From assembly GCA_964057225.1 (NCBI GenBank), contig OZ059895.1:4092001-4156000 (forward strand): a stretch of 64,000 nt of DNA, written 5' to 3'. Position numbers and translations under genes: made by a program. Under the pieces are notes generated by a model. It did not search any database and was not told the origin of the DNA. It was given only the letters and a program-made list of their open reading frames with translations. This document shows positions 35,001-56,000 of this stretch, piece by piece (the stretch's first letter is position 1; every line of letters starts with the position of its first letter). This DNA is from Auanema rhodensis (taxonomy: Eukaryota; Animalia; Nematoda).

Positions 35001-37500
35001 TCTTTGCCTTAAAAAAATGAATCTAAAAACATCTACTTTTTGCTAAATTATTTTGAAATTTTTCGAAAAAATTTTTGTCAAAATGTTTTTGGAAGCAATG
35101 TTGAGTGTACATGGAAACTCAACATACACTAATGCATCATTTTTCAAACGATCATAACTAATTTTTGTATTAAGCGTTTCTCAATGAAGTATAGTGCATT
35201 CGATGCGGATTTTTAAGCTGCGTCGATCTGTGTTATCAGATTTGCGCTAGCTTGAAAATGCACCGAGATATCAACTGATATAAGTTCACACTTATATCCT
35301 CGATTTTCACCCTGAAGAATTAATTTTTTCGTTGAATAACATTGCCCATCGTCTTTGCCTTGGAAAAAAGAATCTAAAAACATCTACTTTTTGCTAAATT
35401 ATTTTGAAATTTTTTGAAAAAATTTTTGTCAAAATGTTTTTGGAAGCAATGTTGAGTGTACATGGAAACTCAACATACACTAATGCATCATTTTTCAAAC
35501 GATCATAACTAATTTTTGTATTAAGCGTTTCTCAATAAAGTATAGTGCATTCGATGCGGATTTTTAAGCTGCGTCGATCTGTGTTATCAGATTTGCGCTA
35601 GCTTAAAAATGCACCGAGATATCAACTGATATAAGTTCACACTTATATCCTCGATTTTCACCCTGAAGAATTAATTTTTTCGTTGAATAACATTGTCCAT
35701 CGTCTTTGCCTTAAAAAAATGAATCTAAAAACATCTACTTTTTGCTAAATTATTTTGAAATTTTTCGAAAAAATTTTTGTCAAAATGTTTTTGGAAGCAA
35801 TGTTGAGTGTACATGGAAACTCAACATACACTAATGCATCATTTTTCAAACGATCATAACTAATTTTTGTATTAAGCGTTTCTCAATGAAGTATAGTGCA
35901 TTCGATGCGGATTTTTAAGCTGCGTCGATCTGTGTTATCAGATTTGCGCTAGCTTGAAAATGCACCGAGATATCAACTGATATAAGTTCACACTTATATC
36001 CTCGATTTTCACCCTGAAGAATTAATTTTTTCGTTGAATAACATTGCCCATCGTCTTTGCCTTGAAAAAAGGAATCTAAAAACATCTACTTTTTGCTAAA
36101 TTATTTTGAAATTTTTTGAAAAAATGTTTGTCAAAATGTTTTTGGAAGCAATGTTGAGTGTACATGGAAACTCAACATACACTAATGCATCATTTTTCAA
36201 ACGATCATAACTAATTTTTGTATTAAGCGTTTCTCAATAAAGTATAGTGCATTCGATGCGGATTTTTAAGCTGCGTCGATCTGTGTTATCAGATTTGCGC
36301 TAGCTTAAAAATGCACCGAGATATCAACTGATATAAGTTCACACTTATATCCTCGATTTTCACCCTGAAGAATTAATTTTTTCGTTGAATAACATTGTCC
36401 ATCGTCTTTGCCTTAAAAAAATGAATCTAAAAACATCTACTTTTTGCTAAATTATTTTGAAATTTTTCGAAAAAATTTTTGTCAAAATGTTTTTGGAAGC
36501 AATGTTGAGTGTACATGGAAACTCAACATACACTAATGCATCATTTTTCAAACGATCATAACTAATTTTTGTATTAAGCGTTTCTCAATAAAGTATAGTG
36601 CATTCGATGCGGATTTTTAAGCTGCGTCGATCTGTGTTATCAGATTTGCGCTAGCTTAAAAATGCACCGAGATATCAACTGATATAAGTTCACACTTATA
36701 TCCTCGATTTTCACCCTGAAGAATTAATTTTTTCGTTGAATAACATTGTCCATCGTCTTTGCCTTAAAAAAATGAATCTAAAAACATCTACTTTTTGCTA
36801 AATTATTTTGAAATTTTTCGAAAAAATTTTTGTCAAAATGTTTTTGGAAGCAATGTTGAGTGTACATGGAAACTCAACATACACTAATGCATCATTTTTC
36901 AAACGATCATAACTAATTTTTGTATTAAGCGTTTCTCAATGAAGTATAGTGCATTCGATGCGGATTTTTAAGCTGCGTCGATCTGTGTTATCAGATTTGC
37001 GCTAGCTTGAAAATGCACCGAGATATCAACTGATATAAGTTCACACTTATATCCTCGATTTTCACCCTGAAGAATTAATTTTTTCGTTGAATAACATTGC
37101 CCATTGTCTTTGCCTTGAAAAAAGGAATCTAAAAACATCTACTTTTTGCTAAATTATTTTGAAATTTTTCGAAAAAATTTTTGTCAAAATGTTTTTGGAA
37201 GCAATGTTGAGTGTACATGGAAACTCAACATACACTAATGCATCATTTTTCAAACGATCATAACTAAGTTTTGTATTAAGCGTTTCTCAATGAAGTATAG
37301 TGCATTCGATGCGGATTTTTAAGCTGCGTCGATCTGTGTTATCAGATTTGCGCTAGCTTGAAAATGCACCGAGATATCAACTGATATAAGTTCACACTTA
37401 TATCCTCGATTTTCACCCTGAAGAATTAATTTTTTCGTTGAATAACATTGCCCATCGTCTTTGCCTTGAAAAAAGGAATCTAAAAACATCTACTTTTTGC
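29100..37500 (+). repeat. 11-monomer (3860-bp) higher-order repeat, a little over 2 copies (approximate ends)
   Basis: 1-bp deletion GATTTCACCC at 30741/34601, CCATTGTC at 29385/33245/37105, AAAGAAATC at 30458/34318. Confidence 0.9.
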
Positions 37501-38629
37501 TAAATTATTTTGAAATTTTTTGAAAAAATTTTTGTCAAAATGTTTTTGGAAGCAATGTTGAGTGTACATGGAAACTCAACATACACTAATGCATCATTTT
37601 TCAAACGATCATAACTAATTTTTGTATTAAGCGTTTCTCAATAAAGTATAGTGCATTCGATGCGGATTTTTAAGCTGCGTCGATCTGTGTTATCTGATTT
37701 GCGCTAGCTTGAAAATGCACCGAGATATCAACTGATATAAGTTCACACTTATATCCTCGATTTTCACCCTGAAGAATTAATTTTTTCGTTGAATAACATT
37801 GCCCATCGTCTTTGCCTTGAAAAAAGGAATCTAAAAACATCTACTTTTTGCTAAATTATTTTGAAATTTTTCGAAAAAACTTTTGTCAAAATGTTTTTGG
37901 AAGCAATGTTGAGTGTACATGGAAACTCAACATACACTAATGCATCATTTTTCAAACGATCATAACTAATTTTTTATTAAGCGTTTCTCAATGAAGTATA
38001 GTGCATTCGATGCGGATTTTTAAGCTGCGTCGATCTTTGTTATCAGATTTGCGCTAGCTTGAAAATGCACCGAGATATCAACTGATATAAGTTCACACTT
38101 ATATCCTCGATTTTCACCCTGAAGAATTAATTTTTTCGTTGAATAACATTGCCCATCGTCTTTGCCTTGAAAAAAGGAATCTAAAAACATCTACTTTTTG
38201 CTAAATTATTTTGAAATTTTTTGAAAAAATGTTTGTCAAAATGTTTTTGGAAGCAATGTTGAGTGTACATGGAAACTCAACATACACTAATGCATCATTT
38301 TTCAAACGATCATAACTAATTTTTGTATTAAGCGTTTCTCAATGAAGTATAGTGCATTCGATGCGGATTTTTTTTACGTGAACTGACGTACGCCAAATGC
38401 TTCACTTTTAAATTCATATTCCGAAAAGATACAGAATATAAAAATAATGATTTATTCAATTTATAGTGATAAAACAGTTAATAATAAATGCGACTACGCG
38501 CTATGAGTCAACAATGTGAACTGATTTAAAAGTGAAGCATTTGGCGTACGTCAGTTCACGTAAATATGACGTAAACTGTATACGACCGCTCACAACAGAA
38601 ATATATTTTAAAATGAATTTACTTATTTT

Positions 38630-38766
38630 TAGCGCGTAGTCGCATATTTAATAATATATATCGTGATTCATAAAATATTTCTTATAAATAAATCATTTTC
38701 ATTATATTTCGTTTTAATTTCGAGATATAAAAAGATATATATTATTAAATATGCGACTACGCGCTA
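38630..38766. repeat. IR1 mirror copy: perfect 33-bp arms 38630-38662 and 38734-38766
   Basis: Exact reverse complements by direct reading. Confidence 0.93.
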
Positions 38767-39054
38767 TGAGCCAACTATGTGAACTGAAAGATAACTTTAT
38801 AGTCCTCGTTACGTCAATTTCACGCGCTTATGACGTGACGCGTATACAACCGGTTTTCTCAAACCAAATGAGAATAAATGATTAATGAATTATTTCTTTT
38901 CAGGATGATTTTAATATTTAATGAATTCTCACTTTTTTAATAGTTTCTCCGTTACTTTCATTAAATTTCGTATAATATACGAAACATTCCAGCCCGAATC
39001 GGGTTGTTTAATATGTTTCACGAAAGAATTCATTTTATTTCATTTAAAAAATGT

Positions 39055-39557
39055 TTATTTTCGTTTGGTACATGTGCAGATAATAAAATTATACTGCTTC
39101 AAATTACAAAATTTACAAATTTTTGCTTTTGTGCAATCTCCTTTATGTCTGTTAAGACAGAGTAAGCATAACTTCATAGAGACTGCTTTGGTAAACTTAG
39201 AAAGTTTAGATGGATGTTGGGAACATTTTTCGGTGTTGTGTTCTTTTTTACAGAGTTTGCAGTATGACTTCGGTTTATATGTTATAGTTGATGTACCATC
39301 TTTCTTAAATAATTTTTTGTTATTTATAAGTTGTTTATTATTAAATTATATACCTTTTCTGGTTGTTTACTACTTATCTCTCGTTTTTCAGAGTAAATAT
39401 CATTCAATTTCTTCAGTGCTTCACACATAGTAACCACGTGTTTCTCCAGAAAGGATATTCTTTCTATGAGATTGTCGGTGGTTGCTTGGTTTTCTTCAAT
39501 TCCTTCCTCCAGAAGTAGTTCTTCATAATCATTCATGATTTCGTTCTGTTCCTTCAT
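39055..39557 (-). CDS. Mirror copy of the spliced zinc-knuckle gene: exon 1 39557-39354, intron 39353-39304, exon 2 39303-39055
   Basis: Reverse complement of 45509-46011 with the splice sites conserved. One intronic SNP and one T/P change near the C-terminus (ICTCTKRK). Confidence 0.8.
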
Positions 39558-39560
39558 GAG

Positions 39561-39665
39561 AAATGAATTTTTCTGTTAGATTCTTTTCTTTATATACTAT
39601 TTCTGGTTGCGTGACTTTACGTGACGTTCACGTAACGTTATGACGTGTCACGAATCATCCGCCGC
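39561..39665 (-). promoter_or_regulatory. Mirror copy of the putative promoter
   Basis: Reverse complement of 45401-45505, with TTTATATA at 39589-39596. Confidence 0.6.
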
Positions 39666-39807
39666 AAAAAAAAACGACCGATTAACTCTTTTCACATAAT
39701 TTGAATTACTTTTTATTTAAAATTAATATATATATATATATATATTTTTTATTCTAGAAACTACACTATGCATCTACAATATTTAATTTAATTCAATGTT
39801 GTTATAG

Positions 39808-42747
39808 TTAAAAGAACATAGTGTAGTCAATTTTTTCGATATTCCGAAGTCTATTTTTCCATAATTCTGGATTATTCTCTTTTATATTTTTTGGTTCATT
39901 ACTTTTTTCATGATTTTGCAATGATTCACTGTTTATTCTATGATTTTCTTCGTTATTTGGTGTATTTTCTGATATTTCCAGAGGGATGAGATGATTAATA
40001 GATCTGAGAAATCGATTCCCTTCAGAATTTCTAATTTTGACGGTTCTGATCTCTCCATCTTGCGAATATATCAATTCTTCAATAATTGCAAGTGGCCATT
40101 TGTGTCTTTTTACGTTATTTTCAATGCATAAAACAATTTCACCAACTTTGGGATTTGTTTTATTACAGTTTTTGTTGATAGCACTCTTGTTAGATAATGC
40201 TCTTAGTTCTTCAAGGTAAGTTAAAGACCATTCTCTCCAAAATTCCGAAATAGTTCTATTGCAAATACTCATCCAGTCTTTTATTTCGTTAATTTGAGAT
40301 AAATTTGTTTTCTTTGCATTATCCGAGAATTCGCAAATGAGGTTTTCTGGATGGTAGTACTCTAGACTTTTAGGAGTTATTATTTTGTCAAAATCGTCAT
40401 GTATGTACGATATAGGTCTCGAATTTATTATATTTTCAATTTCTGTTAAAATTGTACTTAATTCATTGAAATAAACTGTTCTTGTTCCAAGTGTTTTTAT
40501 TAAGTACTTTTTTGTTACTCCAATCAATCTTTCATAAAATCCTCCTTTCCATGGTGAATAAGGAGTTATTTTTTGCCAGTTTACATGCTTTTTTTCAATG
40601 AAAGTTTCGAGAATTTTATCAGTTTTTGTAAACTGACTGCCGTTATCTGATATTATTTTTGTTGGTACTCGTTTTCGAGCAAAAAATTTTCTCAGATTTA
40701 GTGTTAATTCTTTACTGGAGCAATCATTGGCTAAATCCAAATATACTGCTCGTGTACACAGGCAAGTAATTAACATAATCCAAACCTTCTTGTCATAATT
40801 ACTATTTGTTTTTACTAATAACGGACCGGCGTAATCAATACCTATATTTTCGAAAGGTTTATATATTAGGACTCTTTCTTTTGGTAATTGAGGATAATTT
40901 GGGTATTTATATGGCCTATTATTTAATTTTTTACATTTTAAACATTTTGAAATTACTGTATTTATGCATGTTTTAAGTTTTATGATGAAAAATTCTCTTC
41001 TTACTATTGCCATCATGGTTTCTCGCGAACTATGAAGCGATGTCTCATGAATGTAAGTAAGAATAAGTTTAGTGAATGTTTTTTTTCCAAAAAGAAGAAT
41101 TGGATACTGTTTGTTACTATTTTCTGAGTTGCCTAATCGGCCTCGCACTCTTAATATTCCAGAATCATCTGTAATTATATCCAATTTCTTGTATTTTTCT
41201 TTTTTAAGCAAAATGCTGTTTTGGTTTTGATGACATTTTATTAGAAGTTGTTGAATCATTTTGTTTTTTGTCAACGTATCTTTTTCATTAAAATTCTCAA
41301 GCAGATTTTGACTTGTTTTTCCGATATTTTTCTGCATTTTAGTGATGAAAATTAGAACTTGGCGAATTATGTTAATGAACTTTGAATACGATGAAAAAGT
41401 TTGTGCCAAGAAATCTAAATCTTGATTCTCAGCTGGATTCATTTCAGATTTTAACAACAAAGTCACTATTTTTAGTTGTGGTTCATCACAATACTTTTCT
41501 ATAACTTCTTTCAATGTTTTTATGTGCAAATTTCGTTCTTTTTCTGCTTTATACCATTGAGGACCTTCGATCCATTGCATATATGTTTCATCGGGTTTTT
41601 CTAAACCTCTCGTAGGTAAATCGGCAGGATTAAACTTTGTATTCACATAAAAAAATTCAATTTTTCGGTTTCCTTGTTCAATTTCGGTTATTAATTCTGT
41701 TATTTTGTTCAATCTGTTCCGTACATATATTTTTTTCGTTGGATTCTTATGTAACCAATATAGAACAACTTGTGAATCAGTGAAAATTTTAATATTTTTG
41801 ATTTTTACGTTTATTTCTTTGATATTTTCTTTTAACATTTTCATTCCGAAAAGAACAGCAGTTAGTTCTTTCATTGGTATGGTTCCTTCAACCATTGTCG
41901 ATGATTTAGAGCATAAAAAATCTATTTTTTCAATTTTTCCATGAATATTTATACTCATCACATATGCGACGGCCGCTATGACATCTTTAGACGCGTCAGT
42001 GAATAATAAAAATTCATATTTTTGAGATGTATCGCTTGTTTCATCGATAATTGCTCTTTTAATTTCGATTTTTTCGTTTTCGATCTTTTTATATAAGGTT
42101 TTCCATACTGATTGTTGTTTTTCTGGTATTAGTTCGTCCCATCCTATTTTGGAATCCCAAATTTCTTTCAAAAATAACCTTAGTTTTAATGTTAGAGGTT
42201 GTGTTATACCGAGAGGGTCGAATATTGAGTTTATATAGCTCAAAATTCCTCTTTTGGTGATAGACTTCTCTTCCCATTTGGGTATTTTTATTAATAAAAC
42301 ATCTTTTTTACCGTTGTAATGCATTCCTAGTATTTTGAAGCTTGTTTCTTTAATCTGGTCTTTGATTGGGATCATGTCTTTTTGAATTACATCATTAGTA
42401 TAAAATTCTCTAACGTTCATTCCTATTTTTGAAAATAAATTTTTTACTTCCTCATAAAATTTGAAAATTTGATCTTTATTTTCAATTTTCAGCATTATGT
42501 TGTCCACATAAATGTTTCTTAATATATTTTCTGAGATTTCACTTTTTTCCGTTTTTAAAAAATAAATTATGCTTGCTGCTAATAGGAATGGTGAACTGTT
42601 CACTCCAAAAGGTATTCTTGTAAATCGTAAGTTTAGAATGTTACTTTTCTGCGTTCCTTTGTGAATGTCTTTCACCCATAAAATTCTTGTTAAATCTCTA
42701 TGATTTTCGTCTAATTCTATTTGGTGGAACGCTTTCTCTATGTCCAT
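39808..42747 (-). CDS. pol: BEL/Pao Pol fragment, 979 aa: reverse transcriptase (from motif A), RNase H, integrase and C-terminal domain
   Basis: RT: DIEKAFHQI, RIPFGVNSSPFLL, YVDN. RNase H: FTDAS, TIPMKEL, FTDSQ, NPADLPTRG. Integrase zinc finger: HETSLH...CLKC. DDE core: IGIDYAGP, ISDNGSQF, GGFYERLIG. BEL-type C-terminus: FWREWSLTYLEELR...WPLAIIEEL...RSINHLIPLE. No stops or frameshifts. Confidence 0.95.
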   Translation of the reverse strand: MDIEKAFHQIELDENHRDLTRILWVKDIHKGTQKSNILNLRFTRIPFGVNSSPFLLAASIIYFLKTEKSEISENILRNIYVDNIMLKIENKDQIFKFYEEVKNLFSKIGMNVREFYTNDVIQKDMIPIKDQIKETSFKILGMHYNGKKDVLLIKIPKWEEKSITKRGILSYINSIFDPLGITQPLTLKLRLFLKEIWDSKIGWDELIPEKQQSVWKTLYKKIENEKIEIKRAIIDETSDTSQKYEFLLFTDASKDVIAAVAYVMSINIHGKIEKIDFLCSKSSTMVEGTIPMKELTAVLFGMKMLKENIKEINVKIKNIKIFTDSQVVLYWLHKNPTKKIYVRNRLNKITELITEIEQGNRKIEFFYVNTKFNPADLPTRGLEKPDETYMQWIEGPQWYKAEKERNLHIKTLKEVIEKYCDEPQLKIVTLLLKSEMNPAENQDLDFLAQTFSSYSKFINIIRQVLIFITKMQKNIGKTSQNLLENFNEKDTLTKNKMIQQLLIKCHQNQNSILLKKEKYKKLDIITDDSGILRVRGRLGNSENSNKQYPILLFGKKTFTKLILTYIHETSLHSSRETMMAIVRREFFIIKLKTCINTVISKCLKCKKLNNRPYKYPNYPQLPKERVLIYKPFENIGIDYAGPLLVKTNSNYDKKVWIMLITCLCTRAVYLDLANDCSSKELTLNLRKFFARKRVPTKIISDNGSQFTKTDKILETFIEKKHVNWQKITPYSPWKGGFYERLIGVTKKYLIKTLGTRTVYFNELSTILTEIENIINSRPISYIHDDFDKIITPKSLEYYHPENLICEFSDNAKKTNLSQINEIKDWMSICNRTISEFWREWSLTYLEELRALSNKSAINKNCNKTNPKVGEIVLCIENNVKRHKWPLAIIEELIYSQDGEIRTVKIRNSEGNRFLRSINHLIPLEISENTPNNEENHRINSESLQNHEKSNEPKNIKENNPELWKNRLRNIEKIDYTMFF

Positions 42748-45258
42748 TACAACGGTGAAAAAGATGTTTTATTAATAAAAATACCCAAATGGGAAGAGAA
42801 GTCTATCACCAAAAGAGGAATTTTGAGCTATATAAACTCAATATTCGACCCTCTCGGTATAACACAACCTCTAACATTAAAACTAAGGTTATTTTTGAAA
42901 GAAATTTGGGATTCCAAAATAGGATGGGACGAACTAATACCAGAAAAACAACAATCAGTATGGAAAACCTTATATAAAAAGATCGAAAACGAAAAAATCG
43001 AAATTAAAAGAGCAATTATCGATGAAACAAGCGATACATCTCAAAAATATGAATTTTTATTATTCACTGACGCGTCTAAAGATGTCATAGCGGCCGTCGC
43101 ATATGTGATGAGTATAAATATTCATGGAAAAATTGAAAAAATAGATTTTTTATGCTCTAAATCATCGACAATGGTTGAAGGAACCATACCAATGAAAGAA
43201 CTAACTGCTGTTCTTTTCGGAATGAAAATGTTAAAAGAAAATATCAAAGAAATAAACGTAAAAATCAAAAATATTAAAATTTTCACTGATTCACAAGTTG
43301 TTCTATGTTGGTTACATAAGAATCCAACGAAAAAAATATATGTACGGAACAGATTGAACAAAATAACAGAATTAATAACCGAAATTGAACAAGGAAACCG
43401 AAAAATTGAATTTTTTTATGTGAATACAAAGTTTAATCCTGCCGATTTACCTACGAGAGGTTTAGAAAAACCCGATGAAACATATATGCAATGGATCGAA
43501 GGTCCTCAATGGTATAAAGCAGAAAAAGAACGAAATTTGCACATAAAAACATTGAAAGAAGTTATAGAAAAGTATTGTGATGAACCACAACTAAAAATAG
43601 TGACTTTGTTGTTAAAATCTGAAATGAATCCAGCTGAGAATCAAGATTTAGATTTCTTGGCACAAACTTTTTCATCGTATTCAAAGTTCATTAACATAAT
43701 TCGCCAAGTTCTAATTTTCATCACTAAAATGCAGAAAAATATCGGAAAAACAAGTCAAAATCTGCTTGAGAATTTTAATGAAAAAGATACGTTGACAAAA
43801 AACAAAATGATTCAACAACTTCTAATAAAATGTCATCAAAACCAAAACAGCATTTTGCTTAAAAAAGAAAAATACAAGAAATTGGATATAATTACAGATG
43901 ATTCTGGAATATTAAGAGTGCGAGGCCGATTAGGCAACTCAGAAAATAGTAACAAACAGTATCCAATTCTTCTTTTTGGAAAAAAAACATTCACTAAACT
44001 TATTCTTACTTACATTCATGAGACATCGCTTCATAGTTCGCGAGAAACCATGATGGCAATAGTAAGAAGAGAATTTTTCATCATAAAACTTAAAACATGC
44101 ATAAATACAGTAATTTCAAAATGTTTAAAATGTAAAAAATTAAATAATAGGCCATATAAATACCCAAATTATCCTCAATTACCAAAAGAAAGAGTCCTAA
44201 TATATAAACCTTTCGAAAATATAGGTATTGATTACGCCGGTCCGTTATTAGTAAAAACAAATAGTAATTATGACAAGAAGGTTTGGATTATGTTAATTAC
44301 TTGCCTGTGTACACGAGCAGTATATTTGGATTTAGCCAATGATTGCTCCAGTAAAGAATTAACACTAAATCTGAGAAAATTTTTTGCTCGAAAACGAGTA
44401 CCAACAAAAATAATATCAGATAACGGCAGTCAGTTTACAAAAACTGATAAAATTCTCGAAACTTTCATTGAAAAAAAGCATGTAAACTGGCAAAAAATAA
44501 CTCCTTATTCACCATGGAAAGGAGGATTTTATGAAAGATTGATTGGAGTAACAAAAAAGTACTTAATAAAAACACTTGGAACAAGAACAGTTTATTTCAA
44601 TGAATTAAGTACAATTTTAACAGAAATTGAAAATATAATAAATTCGAGACCTATATCGTACATACATGACGATTTTGACAAAATAATAACTCCTAAAAGT
44701 CTAGAGTACTACCATCCAGAAAACCTCATTTGCGAATTCTCGGATAATGCAAAGAAAACAAATTTATCTCAAATTAACGAAATAAAAGACTGGATGAGTA
44801 TTTGCAATAGAACTATTTCGGAATTTTGGAGAGAATGGTCTTTAACTTACCTTGAAGAACTAAGAGCATTATCTAACAAGAGTGCTATCAACAAAAACTG
44901 TAATAAAACAAATCCCAAAGTTGGTGAAATTGTTTTATGCATTGAAAATAACGTAAAAAGACACAAATGGCCACTTGCAATTATTGAAGAATTGATATAT
45001 TCGCAAGATGGAGAGATCAGAACCGTCAAAATTAGAAATTCTGAAGGGAATCGATTTCTCAGATCTATTAATCATCTCATCCCTCTGGAAATATCAGAAA
45101 ATACACCAAATAACGAAGAAAATCATAGAATAAACAGTGAATCATTGCAAAATCATGAAAAAAGTAATGAACCAAAAAATATAAAAGAGAATAATCCAGA
45201 ATTATGGAAAAATAGACTTCGGAATATCGAAAAAATTGACTACACTATGTTCTTTTAG
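42745..45258 (+). pseudogene. pol: BEL/Pao Pol fragment lacking the RT catalytic core (RNase H and integrase frame intact)
   Basis: Matches the left copy from HYNG onward except K>E (42757), Y>C (43307) and a TAG instead of TAA stop. The ORF-track start at 42721 is a TTG in antisense spacer sequence, not an ATG. The first in-frame ATG is near 43108. Confidence 0.88.
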
Positions 45259-45323
45259 CTATAACAACATTGAATTAAATTAAATTTTGTAGATGCATAG
45301 TGTAGTTTCTAGAATAAAAAAAA

Positions 45324-45341
45324 TATATATATATATATATT
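45324..45341. repeat. (TA)n microsatellite between pol and the accessory gene (mirror at about 39725-39744)
   Basis: Direct reading of the TATATA run. Confidence 0.9.
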
Positions 45342-45400
45342 AATTTTAAATAAAAAGTAATTCAAATTATGTGAAAAGAGTTAATCGGTCGTTTTTTTTT

Positions 45401-45505
45401 GCGGCGGATGATTCGTGACACGTCATAACGTTACGTGAACGTCACGTAAAGTCACGCAACCAGAAATAGTATATAAAGAAAAGAATCTAACAGAAAAATT
45501 CATTT
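45401..45505 (+). promoter_or_regulatory. Putative Pol II promoter of the zinc-knuckle gene: clustered ACGT/TGACGT-like sites, TATA box and Inr
   Basis: CpG-rich GTGACACGTCATAACGTTACGTGAACGTCACGTAAAGTCACG in AT-rich DNA, TATATAAA at 45470-45477, TCATTT at 45500-45505 (30 nt after the TATA start), ATG at 45509. Confidence 0.6.
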
Positions 45506-45508
45506 CTC

Positions 45509-46011
45509 ATGAAGGAACAGAACGAAATCATGAATGATTATGAAGAACTACTTCTGGAGGAAGGAATTGAAGAAAACCAAGCAACCACCGACAATCTCAT
45601 AGAAAGAATATCCTTTCTGGAGAAACACGTGGTTACTATGTGTGAAGCACTGAAGAAATTGAATGATATTTACTCTGAAAAACGAGAGATAAGTAGTAAA
45701 CAACCAGAAAAGGTATATAATTTATTAATAAACAACTTATAAATAACAAAAAATTATTTAAGAAAGATGGTACATCAACTATAACATATAAACCGAAGTC
45801 ATACTGCAAACTCTGTAAAAAAGAACACAACACCGAAAAATGTTCCCAACATCCATCTAAACTTTCTAAGTTTACCAAAGCAGTCTCTATGAAGTTATGC
45901 TTACTCTGTCTTAACAGACATAAAGGAGATTGCACAAAAGCAAAAATTTGTAAATTTTGTAATTTGAAGCAGTATAATTTTATTATCTGCCCATGTACCA
46001 AACGAAAATAA
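45509..46011 (+). CDS. Predicted spliced gene: exon 1 45509-45712, intron 45713-45762, exon 2 45763-46011; 150-aa protein with helical N-terminus and three zinc knuckles
   Basis: GAAAAG|GTATAT...TTTAAG|AAAGAT is a phase-0, 50-nt AT-rich intron. Exon 2 translates to KDGTSTITYKPKSYCKLCKKEHNTEKCSQHPSKLSKFTKAVSMKLCLLCLNRHKGDCTKAKICKFCNLKQYNFIICPCTKRK*, containing CX2CX3HX4C, CX2CX3HX3C and a degenerate third CX2C...C. Confidence 0.8.
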
Positions 46012-46026
46012 ACATTTTTTAAATGA

Positions 46027-46032
46027 AATAAA
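46027..46032 (+). terminator. Candidate polyadenylation signal of the zinc-knuckle gene (mirror 39034-39039)
   Basis: AATAAA begins 16 nt after the stop codon. Weak evidence on its own in AT-rich DNA. Confidence 0.4.
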
Positions 46033-46212
46033 ATGAATTCTTTCGTGAAACATATTAAACAACCCGATTCGGGCTGGAATGTTTCGTATATTATACGAAA
46101 TTTAATGAAAGTAACGGAGAAACTATTAAAAAAGTGAGAATTCATTAAATATTAAAATCATCCTGAAAAGAAATAATTCATTAATCATTTATTCTCATTT
46201 GGTTTGAGAAAA

Positions 46213-46315
46213 CCGGTTGTATACGCGTCACCTCATAAGCGCGTGAAATTGACGTAACGAGGACTATAAAGTTATCTTTCAGTTCACATAGTTGGCTCAT
46301 AGCGCGTAGTCGCAT
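46213..46315 (+). other. Conserved CpG-rich non-coding module B (candidate structured RNA or regulatory/LTR element; mirror 38751-38853)
   Basis: Paralogous to 46477-46578: CGGTYGTATAC..ACGTCATA..CGTGAA..TGA-(26 nt)-TCAGTTCACA..GTTGRCTCATAGCGCGTAGTCGCAT. Confidence 0.55.
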
Positions 46316-46436
46316 ATTTAATAATATATATCTTTTTATATCTCGAAATTAAAACGAAATATAATGAAAATGATTTATTTATAAGAAATATTTTATGAAT
46401 CACGATATATATTATTGAATATGCGACTACGCGCTA
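46300..46436. repeat. Nested inverted repeat IR1: 33-bp arms 46300-46332 and 46404-46436, 71-bp spacer
   Basis: TAGCGCGTAGTCGCATATTTAATAATATATATC and its reverse complement, with one mismatch at 46417. Confidence 0.93.
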
Positions 46437-46758
46437 AAAATAAGTAAATTCATTTTAAAATATATTTCTGTTGTGAGCGGTCGTATACAGTTTACGTCAT
46501 ATTTACGTGAACTGACGTACGCCAAATGCTTCACTTTTAAATCAGTTCACATTGTTGACTCATAGCGCGTAGTCGCATTTATTATTAACTGTTTTATCAC
46601 TATAAATTGAATAAATCATTATTTTTATATTCTGTATCTTTTCGGAATATAAATTTAAAAGTGAAGCATTTGGCGTACGTCAGTTCACGTAAATATGACG
46701 TAAACTGTATACGACCGCTCACAACAGAAATATATTTTAAAATGAATTTACTTATTTT
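46437..46758. repeat. Nested inverted repeat IR2: 106-bp arms 46437-46542 and 46653-46758, 110-bp spacer
   Basis: AAAATAAGTAAATTC...CACTTTTAAAT and its reverse complement. The left-arm mirror is cut to 41 bp (38373-38413 pairing with 38524-38564) by the satellite junction. Confidence 0.93.
46477..46578 (+). other. Conserved CpG-rich non-coding module C (paralog of B; mirror 38488-38589)
   Basis: Same blocks and spacing as module B, with an unrelated 26-nt middle segment. Confidence 0.55.
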
Positions 46759-47036
46759 CTATTTAAAACCAATTTTCTTATGTTTTACTTAATTTAATGA
46801 TTCATTACTTATTCTTTCGTATATATACGAAACATTCCCCCTAAAAAAGGGCATTTTCGAACAGATTATAGATTATAGGTGAATGGGGAATTTTTTGTTT
46901 CTTTCTTTGTATGAACGAAATTTATATTCCGAAAAGATACAGAATATAAAAATAATGATTTATTCAATTTATAGTGATAAAACAGTTAATAATAAATGCG
47001 ACTACGCGCTATGAGTCAACAATGTGAACTGATTTA
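46538..47036. repeat. Overlapping inverted repeat IR3: 119-bp arms 46538-46656 and 46918-47036
   Basis: TAAATCAGTTCACATTGTTGACTC...CGGAATATAAATTT and its reverse complement, ending at the right satellite junction. Confidence 0.93.
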
Positions 47037-50000
47037 CATTTTGACAAAAATTTTTTCAAAAAATTTCAAAATAATTTAGCAAAAAGTAGATGTTTTTAAA
47101 TTTCTTTTTTCAAGGCAAAGACGATGGGCAATGTTATTCAACGAAAAAATTAATTCTTCAGGGTGAGAATCGAGGATATATGTGTGAACTTATATCAGTT
47201 GATATCTCGGTGCATTTTCAAGCTAGCGCAAATCTGATAACACAGATCGACGCAGCTTAAAAATCCGCATCGAATGCACTATACTTCATTGAGAAACGCT
47301 TAATACAAAAATAAGTTATGATCGTTTGAAAAATGATGCATTAGTGTATGTTGAGTTTCCATGTACACTCAACATTGCTTCCAAAAACATTTTGACAAAA
47401 ATTTTTTCGAAAAATTTCAAAATAATTTAGCAAAAAGTAGATGTTTTTAGATTCCTTTTTTCAAGGCAAAGACAATGGGCAATGTTATTCAACGAAAAAA
47501 TTAATTCTTCAGGGTGAAAATCGAGGATATAAGTGTGAACTTATATCAGTTGATATCTCGGTGCATTTTCAAGCTAGCGCAAATCTGATAACACAGATCG
47601 ACGCAGCTTAAAAATCCGCATCGAATGCACTATACTTCATTGAGAAACGCTTAATACAAAAATTAGTTATGATTGTTTGAAAAATGATGCATTAGTGTAT
47701 GTTGAGTTTCCATGTACACTCAACATTGCTTCCAAAAACATTTTGACAAAAATTTTTTCGAAAAATTTCAAAATAATTTAGCAAAAAGTAGATGTTTTTA
47801 GATTCATTTTTTTAAGGCAAAGACGATGGACAATGTTATTCAACGAAAAAATTAATTCTTCCGGGTGAAAATCGAGGATATAAGTGTGAACTTATATCAG
47901 TTGATATCTCGGTGCATTTTCAAGCTAGCGCAAATCTGATAACACAGATCGACGCAGCTTAAAAATCCGCATCGAATGCACTATACTTCATTGAGAAACG
48001 CTTAATACAAAAATTAGTTATGATTGTTTGAAAAATGATGCATTAGTGTATGTTGAGTTTCCATGTACACTCAACATTGCTTCCAAAAACATTTTGACAA
48101 AAATTTTTTCGAAAAATTTCAAAATAATTTAGCAAAAAGTAGATGTTTTTAGATTCCTTTTCTCAAGGCAAAGACGATGGACAATGTTATTCAACGAAAA
48201 AATTAATTCTTCAGGGTGAAAATCGAGGATATAAGTGTGAACTTATATCAGTTGATATCTCGGTGCATTTTTAAGCTAGCGCAAATCTGATAACACAGAT
48301 CGACGCAGCTTAAAAATCCGCATCGAATACACTATACTACATTGAGAAACGTTTAATACAAAAATTAGTTATGATCGTTTGAAAAATGATGCATTAGTGT
48401 ATGTTGAGTTTCCATGTACACTCAACATTGCTTCCAAAAACATTTTGACAAAAATTTTTTCGAAAAATTTCAAAATAATTTAGCAAAAAGTAGATGTTTT
48501 TAGATTCCTTTTTTTAAGGCAAAGACGATGGACAATGTTATTCAACGAAAAAATTAATTCTTCAGGGTGAAAATCGAGGATATAAGTGTGAACTTATATC
48601 AGTTGATATCTCGGTGCATTTTCAAGCTAGCGCAAATCTGATAACACAGATCGACGCAGCTTAAAAATCCGCATCGAATGCACTATACTTCATTGAGAAA
48701 CGCTTAATACAAAAATTAGTTATGATTGTTTGAAAAATGATGCATTAGTGTATGTTGAGTTTCCATGTACACTCAACATTGCTTCCAAAAACATTTTGAC
48801 AAAAATTTTTTCGAAAAATTTCAAAATAATTTAGCAAAAAGTAGATGTTTTTAGATTCCTTTTCTCAAGGCAAAGACGATGGACAATGTTATTCAACGAA
48901 AAAATTAATTCTTCAGGGTGAAAATCGAGGATATAAGTGTGAACTTATATCAGTTGATATCTCGGTGCATTTTTAAGCTAGCGCAAATCTGATAACACAG
49001 ATCGACGCAGCTTAAAAATCCGCATCGAATACACTATACTACATTGAGAAACGTTTAATACAAAAATAAGTTATGATCGTTTGAAAAATGATGCATTAGT
49101 GTATGTTGAGTTTCCATGTACACTCAACATTGCTTCCAAAAACATTTTGACAAAAATTTTTTCGAAAAATTTCAAAATAATTTAGCAAAAAGTAGATGTT
49201 TTTAGATTCATTTTTTTAAGGCAAAGACGATGGACAATGTTATTCAACGAAAAAATTAATTCTTCAGGGTGAAAATCGAGGATATAAGTGTGAACTTATA
49301 TCAGTTGATATCTCGGTGCATTTTCAAGCTAGCGCAAATCTGATAACACAGATCGACGCAGCTTAAAAATCCGCATCGAATGCACTATACTTCATTGAGA
49401 AACGCTTAATACAAAAATTAGTTATGATTGTTTGAAAAATGATGCATTAGTGTATGTTGAGTTTCCATGTACACTCAACATTGCTTCCAAAAACATTTTG
49501 ACAAAAATTTTTTCGAAAAATTTCAAAATAATTTAGCAAAAAGTAGATGTTTTTAGATTCCTTTTTTTAAGGCAAAGACGATGGACAATGTTATTCAACG
49601 AAAAAATTAATTCTTCAGGGTGAAAATCGAGGATATAAGTGTGAACTTATATCAGTTGATATCTCGGTGCATTTTCAAGCTAGCGCAAATCTGATAACAC
49701 AGATCGACGCAGCTTAAAAATCCGCATCGAATGCACTATACTTCATTGAGAAACGCTTAATACAAAAATTAGTTATGATTGTTTGAAAAATGATGCATTA
49801 GTGTATGTTGAGTTTCCATGTACACTCAACATTGCTTCCAAAAACATTTTGACAAAAATTTTTTCGAAAAATTTCAAAATAATTTAGCAAAAAGTAGATG
49901 TTTTTAGATTCATTTTTTTAAGGCAAAGACGATGGACAATGTTATTCAACGAAAAAATTAATTCTTCAGGGTGAAAATCGAGGATATAAGTGTGAACTTA

Positions 50001-53000
50001 TATCAGTTGATATCTCGGTGCATTTTCAAGCTAGCGCAAATCTGATAACACAGATCGACGCAGCTTAAAAATCCGCATCGAATGCACTATACTTCATTGA
50101 GAAACGCTTAATACAAAAATTAGTTATGATTGTTTGAAAAATGATGCATTAGTGTATGTTGAGTTTCCATGTACACTCAACATTGCTTCCAAAAACATTT
50201 TGACAAAAATTTTTTCGAAAAATTTCAAAATAATTTAGCAAAAAGTAGATGTTTTTAGATTCATTTTTTTAAGGCAAAGACGATGGACAATGTTATTCAA
50301 CGAAAAAATTAATTCTTCAGGGTGAAAATCGAGGATATAAGTGTGAACTTATATCAGTTGATATCTCGGTGCATTTTCAAGCTAGCGCAAATCTGATAAC
50401 ACAGATCGACGCAGCTTAAAAATCCGCATCGAATGCACTATACTTCATTGAGAAACGTTTAATACAAAAATAAGTTATGATCGTTTGAAAAATGATGCAT
50501 TAGTGTATGTTGAGTTTCCATGTACACTCAACATTGCTTCCAAAAACATTTTGACAAAACTTTTTTCGAAAAATTTCAAAATAATTTAGCAAAAAGTAGA
50601 TGTTTTTAGATTCATTTTTTTAAGGCAAAGACGATGGACAATGTTATTCAACGAAAAAATTAATTCTTCAGGGTGAAAATCGAGGATATAAGTGTGAACT
50701 TATATCAGTTGATATCTCGGTGCATTTTCAAGCTAGCGCAAATCTGATAACACAGATCGACGCAGCTTAAAAATCCGCATCGAATGCACTATACTTCATT
50801 GAGAAACGCTTAATACAAAAATTAGTTATGATTGTTTGAAAAATGATGCATTAGTGTATGTTGAGTTTCCATGTACACTCAACATTGCTTCCAAAAACAT
50901 TTTGACAAAAATTTTTTCGAAAAATTTCAAAATAATTTAGCAAAAAGTAGATGTTTTTAGATTCCTTTTTTTAAGGCAAAGACGATGGACAATGTTATTC
51001 AACGAAAAAATTAATTCTTCAGGGTGAAAATCGAGGATATAAGTGTGAACTTATATCAGTTGATATCTCGGTGCATTTTCAAGCTAGCGCAAATCTGATA
51101 ACACAGATCGACGCAGCTTAAAAATCCGCATCGAATGCACTATACTTCATTGAGAAACGCTTAATACAAAAATTAGTTATGATTGTTTGAAAAATGATGC
51201 ATTAGTGTATGTTGAGTTTCCATGTACACTCAACATTGCTTCCAAAAACATTTTGACAAAAATTTTTTCGAAAAATTTCAAAATAATTTAGCAAAAAGTA
51301 GATGTTTTTAGATTCATTTTTTTAAGGCAAAGACGATGGACAATGTTATTCAACGAAAAAATTAATTCTTCAGGGTGAAAATCGAGGATATAAGTGTGAA
51401 CTTATATCAGTTGATATCTCGGTGCATTTTCAAGCTAGCGCAAATCTGATAACACAGATCGACGCAGCTTAAAAATCCGCATCGAATGCACTATACTTCA
51501 TTGAGAAACGCTTAATACAAAAATTAGTTATGATTGTTTGAAAAATGATGCATTAGTGTATGTTGAGTTTCCATGTACACTCAACATTGCTTCCAAAAAC
51601 ATTTTGACAAAAATTTTTTCGAAAAATTTCAAAATAATTTAGCAAAAAGTAGATGTTTTTAGATTCCTTTTTTTAAGGCAAAGACGATGGACAATGTTAT
51701 TCAACGAAAAAATTAATTCTTCAGGGTGAAAATCGAGGATATAAGTGTGAACTTATATCAGTTGATATCTCGGTGCATTTTCAAGCTAGCGCAAATCTGA
51801 TAACACAGATCGACGCAGCTTAAAAATCCGCATCGAATGCACTATACTTCATTGAGAAACGCTTAATACAAAAATTAGTTATGATTGTTTGAAAAATGAT
51901 GCATTAGTGTATGTTGAGTTTCCATGTACACTCAACATTGCTTCCAAAAACATTTTGACAAAAATTTTTTCGAAAAATTTCAAAATAATTTAGCAAAAAG
52001 TAGATGTTTTTAGATTCCTTTTCTCAAGGCAAAGACGATGGACAATGTTATTCAACGAAAAAATTAATTCTTCAGGGTGAAAATCGAGGATATAAGTGTG
52101 AACTTATATCAGTTGATATCTCGGTGCATTTTTAAGCTAGCGCAAATCTGATAACACAGATCGACGCAGCTTAAAAATCCGCATCGAATACACTATACTA
52201 CATTGAGAAACGTTTAATACAAAAATAAGTTATGATCGTTTGAAAAATGATGCATTAGTGTATGTTGAGTTTCCATGTACACTCAACATTGCTTCCAAAA
52301 ACATTTTGACAAAAATTTTTTCGAAAAATTTCAAAATAATTTAGCAAAAAGTAGATGTTTTTAGATTCATTTTTTTAAGGCAAAGACGATGGACAATGTT
52401 ATTCAACGAAAAAATTAATTCTTCAGGGTGAAAATCGAGGATATAAGTGTGAACTTATATCAGTTGATATCTCGGTGCATTTTCAAGCTAGCGCAAATCT
52501 GATAACACAGATCGACGCAGCTTAAAAATCCGCATCGAATGCACTATACTTCATTGAGAAACGCTTAATACAAAAATTAGTTATGATTGTTTGAAAAATG
52601 ATGCATTAGTGTATGTTGAGTTTCCATGTACACTCAACATTGCTTCCAAAAACATTTTGACAAAAATTTTTTCGAAAAATTTCAAAATAATTTAGCAAAA
52701 AGTAGATGTTTTTAGATTCCTTTTCTCAAGGCAAAGACGATGGACAATGTTATTCAACGAAAAAATTAATTCTTCAGGGTGAAAATCGAGGATATAAGTG
52801 TGAACTTATATCAGTTGATATCTCGGTGCATTTTTAAGCTAGCGCAAATCTGATAACACAGATCGACGCAGCTTAAAAATCCGCATCGAATACACTATAC
52901 TACATTGAGAAACGTTTAATACAAAAATTAGTTATGATCGTTTGAAAAATGATGCATTAGTGTATGTTGAGTTTCCATGTACACTCAACATTGCTTCCAA

Positions 53001-56000
53001 AAACATTTTGACAAAAATTTTTTCGAAAAATTTCAAAATAATTTAGCAAAAAGTAGATGTTTTTAGATTCCTTTTTTAAAGGCAAAAATGATGGACAATG
53101 TTATTCAACGAAAAAATTAATTCTTCAGGGTGAAAATCGAGGATATAAGTGTGAACTTATATCAGTTAATATCTCGGTGCATTTTTAAGCTAGCGCAAAT
53201 CTGATAACACAGATCGACGCAGCTTACAAATCCGCATCGAATGCACTATACTTCATTGAGAAACGCTTAATACAAAACTTAGTTATGATCGTTTGAAAAA
53301 TGATGCATTAGTGTATGTTGAGTTTCCATGTACACTCAACATTGCTTCCAAAAACATTTTGACAAAAATTTTTTCGAAAAATTTCAAAATAATTTAGCAA
53401 AAAGTAGATGTTTTTAGATTCCTTTTTTAAAGGCAAAGATGATGGACAATGTTATTCAACGAAAAAATTAATTCTTCAGGGTGAAAATCGAGGATATAAG
53501 TGTGAACTTATATCAGTTGATATCTCGGTGCATTTTCAAGCTAGCGCAAATCTGATAACACAGATCGACGCAGCTTAAAAATCCGCATCGAATGCACTAT
53601 ACTTCATTGAGAAACGCTTAATACAAAAATTAGTTATGATTGTTTGAAAAATGATGCATTAGTGTATGTTGAGTTTCCATGTACACTCAACATTGCTTCC
53701 AAAAACATTTTGACAAAAATTTTTTCGAAAAATTTCAAAATAATTTAGCAAAAAGTAGATGTTTTTAGATTCCTTTTCTCAAGGCAAAGACGATGGACAA
53801 TGTTATTCAACGAAAAAATTAATTCTTCAGGGTGAAAATCGAGGATATAAGTGTGAACTTATATCAGTTGATATCTCGGTGCATTTTTAAGCTAGCGCAA
53901 ATCTGATAACACAGATCGACGCAGCTTAAAAATCCGCATCGAATACACTATACTACATTGAGAAACGTTTAATACAAAAATTAGTTATGATCGTTTGAAA
54001 AATGATGCATTAGTGTATGTTGAGTTTCCATGTACACTCAACATTGCTTCCAAAAACATTTTGACAAAAATTTTTTCGAAAAATTTCAAAATAATTTAGC
54101 AAAAAGTAGATGTTTTTAGATTCCTTTTTTTAAGGCAAAGACGATGGACAATGTTATTCAACGAAAAAATCAATTCTTCAGGGTGAAAATCGAGGATATA
54201 AGTGTGAACTTATATCAGTTGATATCTCGGTGCATTTTTAAGCTAGCGCAAATCTGATAACACAGATCGACGCAGCTTAAAAATCCGCATCGAATACACT
54301 ATACTACATTGAGAAACGTTTAATACAAAAATTAGTTATGATCGTTTGAAAAATGATGCATTAGTGTATGTTGAGTTTCCATGTACACTCAACATTGCTT
54401 CCAAAAACATTTTGACAAAAATTTTTTCGAAAAATTTCAAAATAATTTAGCAAAAAGTAGATGTTTTTAGATTCCTTATTTAAAGGCAAAGATGATGGAC
54501 AATGTTATTCAACGAAAAAATTAATTCTTCAGGGTGAAAATCGAGGATATAAGTGTGAACTTATATCAGTTAATATCTCGGTGCATTTTTAAGCTAGCGC
54601 AAATCTGATAACACAGATCGACGCAGCTTACAAATCCGCATCGAATACACTATACTACATTGAGAAACGTTTAATACAAAAATTAGTTATGATCGTTTGA
54701 AAAATGATGCATTAGTGTATGTTGAGTTTCCATGTACACTCAACATTGCTTCCAAAAACATTTTGACAAAAATTTTTTCGAAAAATTTCAAAATAATTTA
54801 GCAAAAAGTAGATGTTTTTAGATTCCTTTTTTAAAGGCAAAAATGATGGACAATGTTATTCAACGAAAAAATTAATTCTTCAGGGTGAAAATCGAGGATA
54901 TAAGTGTGAACTTATATCAGTTAATATCTCGGTGCATTTTTAAGCTAGCGCAAATCTGATAACACAGATCGACGCAGCTTACAAATCCGCATCGAATGCA
55001 CTATACTTCATTGAGAAACGCTTAATACAAAACTTAGTTATGATCGTTTGAAAAATGATGCATTAGTGTATGTTGAGTTTCCATGTACACTCAACATTGC
55101 TTCCAAAAACATTTTGACAAAAATTTTTTCGAAAAATTTCAAAATAATTTAGCAAAAAGTAGATGTTTTTAGATTCCTTTTTTAAAGGCAAAGATGATGG
55201 ACAATGTTATTCAACAAAAAAATTAATTCTTCAGGGTGAAAATCGAGGATATAAGTGTGAACTTATATCAGTTGATATCTCGGTGCATTTTCAAGCTAGC
55301 GCAAATCTGACGCTTAAAAATCCGCATCGAATGCACTATACTTCATTGAGAAACGCTTAATACAAAAATTAGTTATGATTGTTTGAAAAATGATGCATTA
55401 GTGTATGTTGAGTTTCCATGTACACTCAACATTGCTTCCAAAAACATTTTGACAAAAATTTTTTCGAAAAATTTCAAAATAATTTAGCAAAAAGTAGATG
55501 TTTTTAGATTCCTTTTCTCAAGGCAAAGACGATGGACAATGTTATTCAACGAAAAAATTAATTCTTCAGGGTGAAAATCGAGGATATAAGTGTGAACTTA
55601 TATCAGTTGATATCTCGGTGCATTTTTAAGCTAGCGCAAATCTGATAACACAGATCGACGCAGCTTAAAAATCCGCATCGAATACACTATACTACATTGA
55701 GAAACGTTTAATACAAAAATTAGTTATGATCGTTTGAAAAATGATGCATTAGTGTATGTTGAGTTTCCATGTACACTCAACATTGCTTCCAAAAACATTT
55801 TGACAAAAATTTTTTCGAAAAATTTCAAAATAATTTAGCAAAAAGTAGATGTTTTTAGATTCCTTTTTTAAAGGCAAAGATGATGGACAATGTTATTCAA
55901 CGAAAAAATTAATTCTTCAGGGTGAAAATCGAGGATATAAGTGTGAACTTATATCAGTTAATATCTCGGTGCATTTTTAAGCTAGCGCAAATCTGATAAC

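What the first reader, a model, noticed from the sequence alone, without database searches (positions are those of the whole stretch)
45401..46032. Hidden intron-containing 'mini-Gag' zinc-knuckle gene with its own promoter, downstream of BEL/Pao pol
Seen: the 77-aa ORF contains AAG|GT at 45712/45713. Removing a 50-nt AT-rich GT..TTTAAG intron fuses it in frame to an 82-codon Cys-rich frame that the ORF track misses. The 150-aa product has an acidic, amphipathic-helix N-terminus and CKLCKKEHNTEKC / CLLCLNRHKGDC / CKFCNLKQYNFIIC. A TATA box, Inr and AATAAA flank it at sensible spacing. Known: three successive Cys/His knuckles are the signature of BEL/Pao Gag, which normally lies upstream of pol in the same polyprotein. 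The post-integrase position usually holds env-like ORFs or nothing, and ordinary spliceosomal introns tend to be lost in retrotransposition. Inference: this is a separately transcribed, capsid-less nucleocapsid-like accessory protein. It could act as an RNA chaperone, export factor, silencing suppressor or dominant-negative copy-number regulator, and the element would have to retain the intron in its genomic RNA. A co-opted host gene next to the element is the alternative.
Basis: partly seen in the sequence, partly recalled or inferred. Interest (0 to 1): 0.85.

Follow-up and report, generated by a model that had tools for sequence, protein, structure and literature searches.

The report
Capsid-less Gag-like gene after Bel/Pao pol
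Just downstream of a truncated Bel/Pao retroelement polymerase lies a small two-frame gene for a long acidic helix joined to the element family's three-zinc-knuckle RNA-binding module but lacking the capsid core; the sequence features are real and a few similar proteins exist elsewhere, but this copy sits in a dead, mirror-duplicated relic inside satellite DNA, and its splicing and function remain unproven.

Summary
The Cys-rich frame is a true relative of the Bel/Pao Gag nucleocapsid module: it matches a Gag carrying Pfam DUF1759 at E 6e-11, with nine invariant Cys/His columns. Neither frame contains a capsid core. A few other proteins share the layout of a helical, acidic N-terminus plus three knuckles. 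One of them is multi-copy in Caenorhabditis remanei.

The link between the two frames is only circumstantial. The 50-nt stretch looks like an intron: 10% GC, stops in all frames, GT..AG. Its splice sites are weak, and no tool or relative confirms it. The first frame has no significant homologue.

The pol is cut short at its 5' end, and pol plus mini-gene are present twice as a 3.9-kb head-to-head inverted duplication (99.75% identical). This lies inside a 351-bp satellite array whose two sides have opposite orientation. No LTR can be delimited.

I read it as an element-borne, capsid-less Gag derivative preserved in a dead locus. That makes it a new variant of a known kind, of moderate interest.

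The parts
45509..46011 (+). Mini-gene, right-arm copy, given as one part. A first frame with ATG encodes an acidic single helix; a second frame encodes the three-knuckle module and ends in TAA.
39055..39557 (-). Mirror copy of the mini-gene in the left arm. Both frames are open. It differs from the right copy at 2 bases, giving 1 amino-acid change in the second frame.
45391..45508 (+). Promoter-like stretch: G+C-rich cluster of five ACGT cores (45420-45447), TATAAA at 45472, Inr-like motif with its A at 45502, 7 nt before the ATG.
46007..46032 (+). Two AATAAA motifs. The first overlaps the stop codon.
42745..45258 (+). Right-arm Bel/Pao pol fragment: 'Peptidase_A17'/RNase H-like region, integrase zinc and core domains, DUF5641. 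One uninterrupted frame, cut off at its 5' end by the palindrome junction.
39808..42744 (-). Left-arm Bel/Pao pol fragment. It is 423 nt longer at its 5' end and so also holds the C-terminal two thirds of the RT domain. One uninterrupted frame, cut off at its 5' end.
38373..42321 (.). Left arm of the inverted duplication.
42322..42744 (.). Non-palindromic spacer. It continues the left copy's pol.
42745..46693 (.). Right arm of the inverted duplication. It is 99.75% identical to the left arm: 10 substitutions, no gaps.
46012..47035 (.). Rearranged 3' flank. It has two further ACGT-cluster/TATA-like modules, a 44-nt direct repeat, and two perfect local inverted repeats (106 and 119 nt). The last 342 nt have no partner in the left arm. 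No ORF of note and no recognisable LTR ends.
45636..46145 (-). Antisense ORF of 169 codons overlapping the mini-gene (mirror copy 38921..39430, plus strand). It is unusually long and has no homologue in Pfam or the PDB.
1..38372 (+). 351-bp satellite array, about 109 monomers.
47036..64000 (-). The same 351-bp satellite in the opposite orientation.

Best explanation
The segment encodes a Gag-derived protein without a capsid core. It has an acidic helix of about 65 residues that could oligomerise, followed by the basic three-knuckle nucleocapsid module of Bel/Pao Gag. It belongs to the 3' part of a Bel/Pao element, lying 250 nt after the pol stop on the same strand with the same A-rich bias, and not to the host. 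Inferred mode of action: the helix brings copies together and the knuckle module binds nucleic acid. The protein would then coat or chaperone the element's RNA, either helping full-length Gag or competing with it. Expression from its own TATA/Inr promoter and removal of the 50-nt stretch as an intron are plausible but not shown. This particular locus is a relic: the element lost its 5' half and was duplicated head to head inside satellite DNA.
For: Shown. The second frame matches Bel/Pao Gag proteins carrying DUF1759 (E 5.9e-11 and 1.1e-8), with nine invariant Cys/His columns. Core-less proteins share the layout of a helical acidic N-terminus plus three knuckles: P0003, P0005, P0007, P0004. 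P0003 shares the derived third knuckle and the same C-terminal end. P0005's N-terminal region recurs at two other C. remanei loci. The first frame is a confident single helix, with 7 of 10 a/d positions hydrophobic in the best heptad register. The intron-like stretch has 10% GC, a value found in none of the 2463 50-nt windows of the pol ORF, and has stops in all three frames. The A-rich strand bias of pol continues through the mini-gene and fades after it. The TATA-Inr pair and ACGT cluster lie directly upstream. Both arm copies keep both frames open.
Against: The first frame has no database homologue. Its similarity to the relatives' N-termini is only suggestive (2-4% of shuffles score as well), and it has none to Gag N-termini. 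The splice sites are weak: the donor lacks the usual G at +5, and the acceptor is AAG behind an A-rich tract (comparison with consensus is from general knowledge). No relative's gene structure was examined. The short relatives are singletons (one member, one contig each), and some could be fragments or faulty gene models. With gag missing from the window, a recent origin from the element's own gag cannot be tested. No LTR is delimited, so 'inside the element' rests on position and composition alone. No expression data.
Confidence: 0.5

Rival explanations
1. It is a functionless scrap of gag. A rearranged or internally deleted Bel/Pao gag lost its capsid core, landed next to the pol fragment in a region prone to rearrangement, and carries one frameshift that the reader bridged with a chance GT..AG pair.
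For: The locus is heavily rearranged, with a palindrome, perfect local inverted repeats and an unpaired 342 nt. Twelve frame-compatible GT..AG pairs exist nearby, so finding one is not remarkable. The splice sites are weak. The first frame lacks homologues. A 96-codon open frame is not rare by chance (6% of shuffles).
Against: The same core-less layout ends at the same point in independent proteins and is multi-copy in C. remanei. The stretch between the frames has a composition never seen in the element's coding sequence, and stops in every frame. An ATG sits 37 nt after a TATA box with an ACGT cluster, leaving no room for the R-U5-PBS leader that precedes a normal gag (PMC8742986 for the normal layout).
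Confidence: 0.25
2. The TATA box, Inr and AATAAA are the U3 promoter, R start and poly(A) signal of the element's 3' LTR. The small ORF would then lie inside the LTR and would not be an internal gene with a promoter of its own.
For: An LTR carries exactly this set of signals in this order. A span from just after the pol stop to beyond 46032 (about 0.75 kb) fits the 0.2-1.2 kb LTR range (PMC8742986). A sense-strand AATAAA straight after the gene would otherwise end the genomic RNA before the LTR.
Against: No polypurine tract or TG start is evident after the pol stop. A further 1 kb of non-satellite sequence follows before the satellite. An R region of about 0.5 kb holding a Gag-like ORF has no precedent known to me. 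There is no second LTR in the window for comparison.
Confidence: 0.12
3. It is a host gene, or a domesticated Gag-derived host gene, that merely neighbours the element.
For: P0005, P0008 and P0009 are annotated as ordinary hypothetical proteins on C. remanei chromosomes.
Against: The gene lies between a pol fragment and a satellite array of more than 17 kb, and it was duplicated together with the pol. It shares the pol's strand bias. The C. remanei relatives are multi-copy, as mobile-element genes are.
Confidence: 0.05
4. The real gene is the 169-codon ORF on the opposite strand, and the sense frames are secondary.
For: The ORF is longer than any open frame in 500 shuffles of the region. The antisense frame is stop-free opposite the second sense frame in only 1.7% of codon-order shuffles. 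Its codon score is slightly positive.
Against: The sense frame has homologues with invariant Cys/His. The antisense product is rich in Leu, Phe, Ser and Ile, as expected opposite a Lys/Glu-rich gene, and has no Pfam or PDB match. The codon score favours any stop-free frame.
Confidence: 0.05

Closest known systems
Nucleocapsid (NC) domain of Bel/Pao (Belpaoviridae) Gag
   Same: Three successive Cys/His knuckles with the same spacing and a basic character. Direct sequence homology to Gag proteins carrying Pfam DUF1759. Three knuckles are described as a belpaovirus hallmark (bioRxiv 10.64898/2026.03.22.711591).
   Different: In Gag the module follows the capsid core and lies upstream of pol. Here there is no core and the module lies downstream of integrase. 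The third knuckle has Tyr where relatives have His, with an extra Cys pair at the end, a trait shared only with P0003.
Core-less 'helix plus three knuckles' proteins P0003, P0005 (C. remanei GCK72_000732), P0007 and P0004
   Same: Same layout and same end point, 31-41% identity over the knuckle module. None has a DUF1759 match.
   Different: Their N-termini are not demonstrably homologous to the window's first frame. Their genomic context was not examined. None has a described function.
env-like third genes of Bel/Pao elements (for example in Tas and roo)
   Same: Same position, downstream of pol (PMC8742986, PMC13524379).
   Different: Those encode envelope or fusion glycoproteins. This protein is small and soluble-looking, with an acidic helix and zinc knuckles.
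Ty1 p22/p18, the self-encoded truncated Gag that limits Ty1 copy number (my own knowledge, not tested here)
   Same: A shortened Gag-derived protein encoded by the element itself from an internal start. It is a model for how a partial Gag can interfere with assembly.
   Different: p22 is collinear with gag and keeps the C-terminal capsid part. This protein lacks the capsid entirely, is a separate gene after pol, and belongs to another family.
ORF1 proteins of non-LTR retrotransposons: L1 ORF1p coiled coil, and I-factor or Jockey-type ORF1 with CCHC knuckles (PMC5940361, PMC3905857)
   Same: A helix that could oligomerise, plus a basic nucleic-acid-binding part and no capsid shell. This is the closest analogy for how it may work.
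   Different: There is no sequence relationship, those proteins lie upstream of the RT gene, and the element class differs.

Membership tests
Bel/Pao (Belpaoviridae) element, for the locus | pol with RT, RNase H and integrase in that order, and the family's Pfam signature (Peptidase_A17, DUF5641) | tested here: met
   Peptidase_A17 at 1e-39, DUF5641 at 1e-14, Integrase_H2C2, rve, and the RVT_1 C-terminal part in the left copy
Bel/Pao (Belpaoviridae) element, for the locus | Flanking LTRs of 0.2-1.2 kb, with PBS and polypurine tract (PMC8742986) | tested here: inconclusive
   Both copies lack their 5' half, so no LTR pair exists in the window. No clear polypurine tract or TG..CA ends were seen in the 3' flank.
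Bel/Pao (Belpaoviridae) element, for the locus | gag with capsid core and NC, upstream of pol | tested here: not met
   Absent from both copies because of the 5' truncation. This says nothing about the intact family.
Bel/Pao Gag protein, for the mini-gene | Three-knuckle NC module homologous to that of Gag | tested here: met
Bel/Pao Gag protein, for the mini-gene | Capsid core (Pfam DUF1759) | tested here: not met
   no DUF1759 match in either frame at E up to 1, and about 82 residues before the first Cys leave no room for it. So it is a Gag derivative, not a Gag.
Pfam zf-CCHC (PF00098) zinc knuckle | Match to the family profile | tested here: not met
   no match at E up to 1. The first knuckle has spacing C-X2-C-X3-H-X4-C.
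Spliceosomal intron, for the 50-nt stretch | GT..AG ends, frame-restoring length, non-coding composition | tested here: met
Spliceosomal intron, for the 50-nt stretch | Predicted by a tool, or shared by relatives | not tested
   No splice predictor was available.
Spliceosomal intron, for the 50-nt stretch | Spliced transcripts | not testable with these tools
   No transcript data were available.
env-like third gene of Bel/Pao | Envelope or fusion glycoprotein features | tested here: not met
   no such domain. The product is an acidic helix plus a basic knuckle module.

The most novel reading that the evidence does not exclude
A lineage of Bel/Pao elements carries a second, separately expressed and spliced Gag paralogue downstream of integrase. 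This paralogue has shed the capsid core and acts on the element's own RNA as a self-encoded helper or brake. The scattered core-less relatives (P0003, P0005, P0007) would be the same gene in other hosts.
Probability: 0.3. Interest if true: 0.7.

Novelty: new variant of a known kind. Interest (0 to 1): 0.45.

Why it matters
Bel/Pao elements are described as having gag, pol and sometimes an env-like gene. If this is a capsid-less Gag paralogue after integrase, it would be a new kind of accessory gene for the family. It would also be a natural case of a retroelement encoding a shortened Gag in addition to its normal one, an arrangement linked in yeast Ty1 to copy-number control. The locus is also a clean example of a fold-back type inverted duplication of a retroelement inside satellite DNA.

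Tried and rejected
- Word-indexed protein searches found nothing, either with the second frame as it stands open or with the 77-codon ORF.
- Pfam gave no significant hit for either frame.
- PDB sequence searches gave nothing with the second frame. A profile of A1 gave only marginal eIF3g knuckle hits at E 0.016.
- Foldseek with the second-frame model (pLDDT 71) gave no match below E 1 in the PDB or BFVD.
- The first frame showed no significant BLASTP similarity to P0003, P0004 or P0005. Against profiles of full Gag N-termini it scored at shuffle level.
- Rfam gave only sub-threshold hairpin-like hits. The bacterial promoter/terminator scan does not apply here.
- A paper search on the satellite length did not identify a host.
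- A 'second complete element in tandem' is rejected. There is no room for an LTR, leader and PBS between the pol stop and the ATG, and no pol follows the mini-gene.
- I tested whether the palindrome runs through the satellites. No mirrored register exceeds the 98% background.

Full report
**Layout of the window.** The window is not a simple element in unique DNA.
- Bases 1-38372 are about 109 copies of a 351-bp satellite. Bases 47036-64000 are the same satellite in the opposite orientation.
- Between them lies an 8.7-kb core that is a head-to-head inverted duplication. The left arm is 38373-42321 and the right arm is 42745-46693. They are 99.75% identical, with 10 substitutions and no gaps. 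A 423-nt non-palindromic spacer separates them.
- Ten substitutions and no indels, the asymmetric spacer, and 342 nt present only on the right (46694-47035) argue for a real structure and against a read artefact. I could not check reads.
- The satellite arrays themselves show no mirrored register above the 98% background.
- The contig is not human. It carries a Bel/Pao element, a family not found in mammals (PMC3118150), in 31% G+C DNA.

**The element.** The two large ORFs (39808..42747 minus, 42721..45258 plus) are Bel/Pao pol. They match Peptidase_A17, the integrase zinc and core domains, and DUF5641. The left copy also holds the C-terminal two thirds of RT.
- Break count: each copy has one 5' truncation at the palindrome junction.
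- The retained pol parts have no internal stop or frameshift.
- gag, protease and the first part of RT are absent from both copies.
- The spacer continues the left copy's pol. This is the pattern expected of a fold-back inverted duplication after a break inside the element (inference).

**The observation.**
- The mini-gene exists twice. The second copy is at 39055..39557 on the minus strand, with both frames open and one amino-acid difference.
- In the splice tests, one search printed the frame-compatible GT/AG pairs and one search printed stop counts per frame in the proposed intron. I use these only as counts.

**What the second frame is.** An exhaustive HMMER search of 1.84 billion representatives gave seven hits.
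- Three are Bel/Pao Gag proteins. They have the capsid-core domain DUF1759 followed by the same Cys/His module, repeated three or four times in two of them.
- Nine Cys/His columns are invariant across all eight aligned sequences.
- So the frame is a genuine relative of the Bel/Pao nucleocapsid module. A 2026 preprint calls three knuckles a distinguishing feature of belpaoviruses (10.64898/2026.03.22.711591).
- Pfam zf-CCHC, the PDB and two fold libraries gave nothing significant.

**Core-less relatives.** The other four hits (P0003 106 aa, P0007 149 aa, P0005 168 aa, P0004 293 aa) have no DUF1759. They consist of an acidic, helical N-terminus running straight into the three knuckles.
- P0003 is the closest, at 41% identity. 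It shares the window's derived third knuckle and the same C-terminal end.
- P0005 is a hypothetical protein of Caenorhabditis remanei. Its N-terminal region recurs at about 90% identity in two further proteins of that genome, so it is multi-copy there.
- The architecture that the splice model predicts therefore exists elsewhere. It is rare, though: each cluster has one member on one contig.

**The first frame and the link between the frames.** The first frame folds as one helix (pLDDT 92), has net charge -8, and has a plausible heptad register.
- It has no database homologue and no similarity to Gag N-termini.
- Against profiles of the short relatives' N-termini it beats 96-98% of shuffles. 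That is suggestive only.
- For an intron: the 50-nt stretch has 10% G+C, a value found in none of the 2463 windows of the pol ORF. It has stops in all three frames and canonical GT..AG ends.
- Against an intron: the splice sites are weak, 12 frame-compatible GT..AG pairs exist nearby, and no tool or relative confirms it.
- A 20-nt repeat makes the donor region an 18-of-20 copy of the TATA-box region. I cannot explain this.
- I put intron against a single frameshift at about even odds.

**Position in the element.** The gene starts 250 nt after the pol stop, on the same strand, and the A-rich strand bias of pol runs through it and then fades.
- The ATG lies 37 nt after a TATA box. That leaves no room for the R-U5-PBS leader of a normal gag, so this is not the start of a second element.
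- About 1 kb of non-satellite sequence follows. It has two more ACGT-cluster/TATA-like modules and two perfect local inverted repeats, and no recognisable LTR ends.
- With no 5' LTR in the window, the 3' LTR cannot be delimited. I cannot exclude that the TATA/Inr/AATAAA set is the LTR's own.

**What I left out.** The ICTV profile defines Bel/Pao elements as viruses that infect metazoa (PMC8742986). I therefore did not fetch DNA of related elements or of the relatives' loci by look-up, pattern or accession. That step is referred.

**Verdict.** The most likely reading (0.5) is an element-borne, capsid-less Gag derivative that binds nucleic acid through its knuckles and self-associates through its helix, preserved here in a dead, truncated and mirror-duplicated copy. 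A functionless gag scrap with one frameshift is the main rival (0.25).

Noticed in passing
window 38373-46693: The whole pol-plus-mini-gene unit is a head-to-head inverted duplication (arms 3949 nt, 99.75% identical, 423-nt spacer). It is flanked by 351-bp satellite arrays of opposite orientation. Seven of the 10 arm differences lie in the 1.4 kb after pol, and only 3 lie in the 2.5 kb of pol.
   Followed up: yes
window 45636-46145 (minus strand); mirror copy 38921-39430 (plus strand): A 169-codon antisense ORF overlaps the mini-gene. It is longer than any open frame in 500 shuffles, and the frame is stop-free opposite the second sense frame in only 1.7% of codon-order shuffles. No Pfam or PDB match. 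No large protein-database search was left for it.
   Followed up: partly
window 45457-45476 and 45701-45720: A 20-nt direct repeat (18 of 20 identical).
   Followed up: no
window 46437-47036: Two perfect local inverted repeats (106 nt and 119 nt, both 100% complementary) interlock here. The last 342 nt before the satellite have no counterpart in the left arm. A single deletion on the left would explain both this and the differing satellite phase at the two junctions.
   Followed up: partly
window 45420-45447, about 46240-46270, about 46490-46520: Three clusters of ACGT cores (bZIP-site-like), each followed by a TATA-like box. Only the first precedes an ORF. The second and third share a 44-nt repeat that starts with an Inr-like TCAGTT.
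   Followed up: partly
proteins P0001 and P0002: These Bel/Pao Gag proteins carry the three-knuckle module three or four times in tandem, an unusually long nucleocapsid region.
   Followed up: no
window 1-38372 and 47036-64000: The 351-bp satellite is about 98% identical between monomers and shows no similarity to the element. A paper search on the monomer length did not identify the host.
   Followed up: partly
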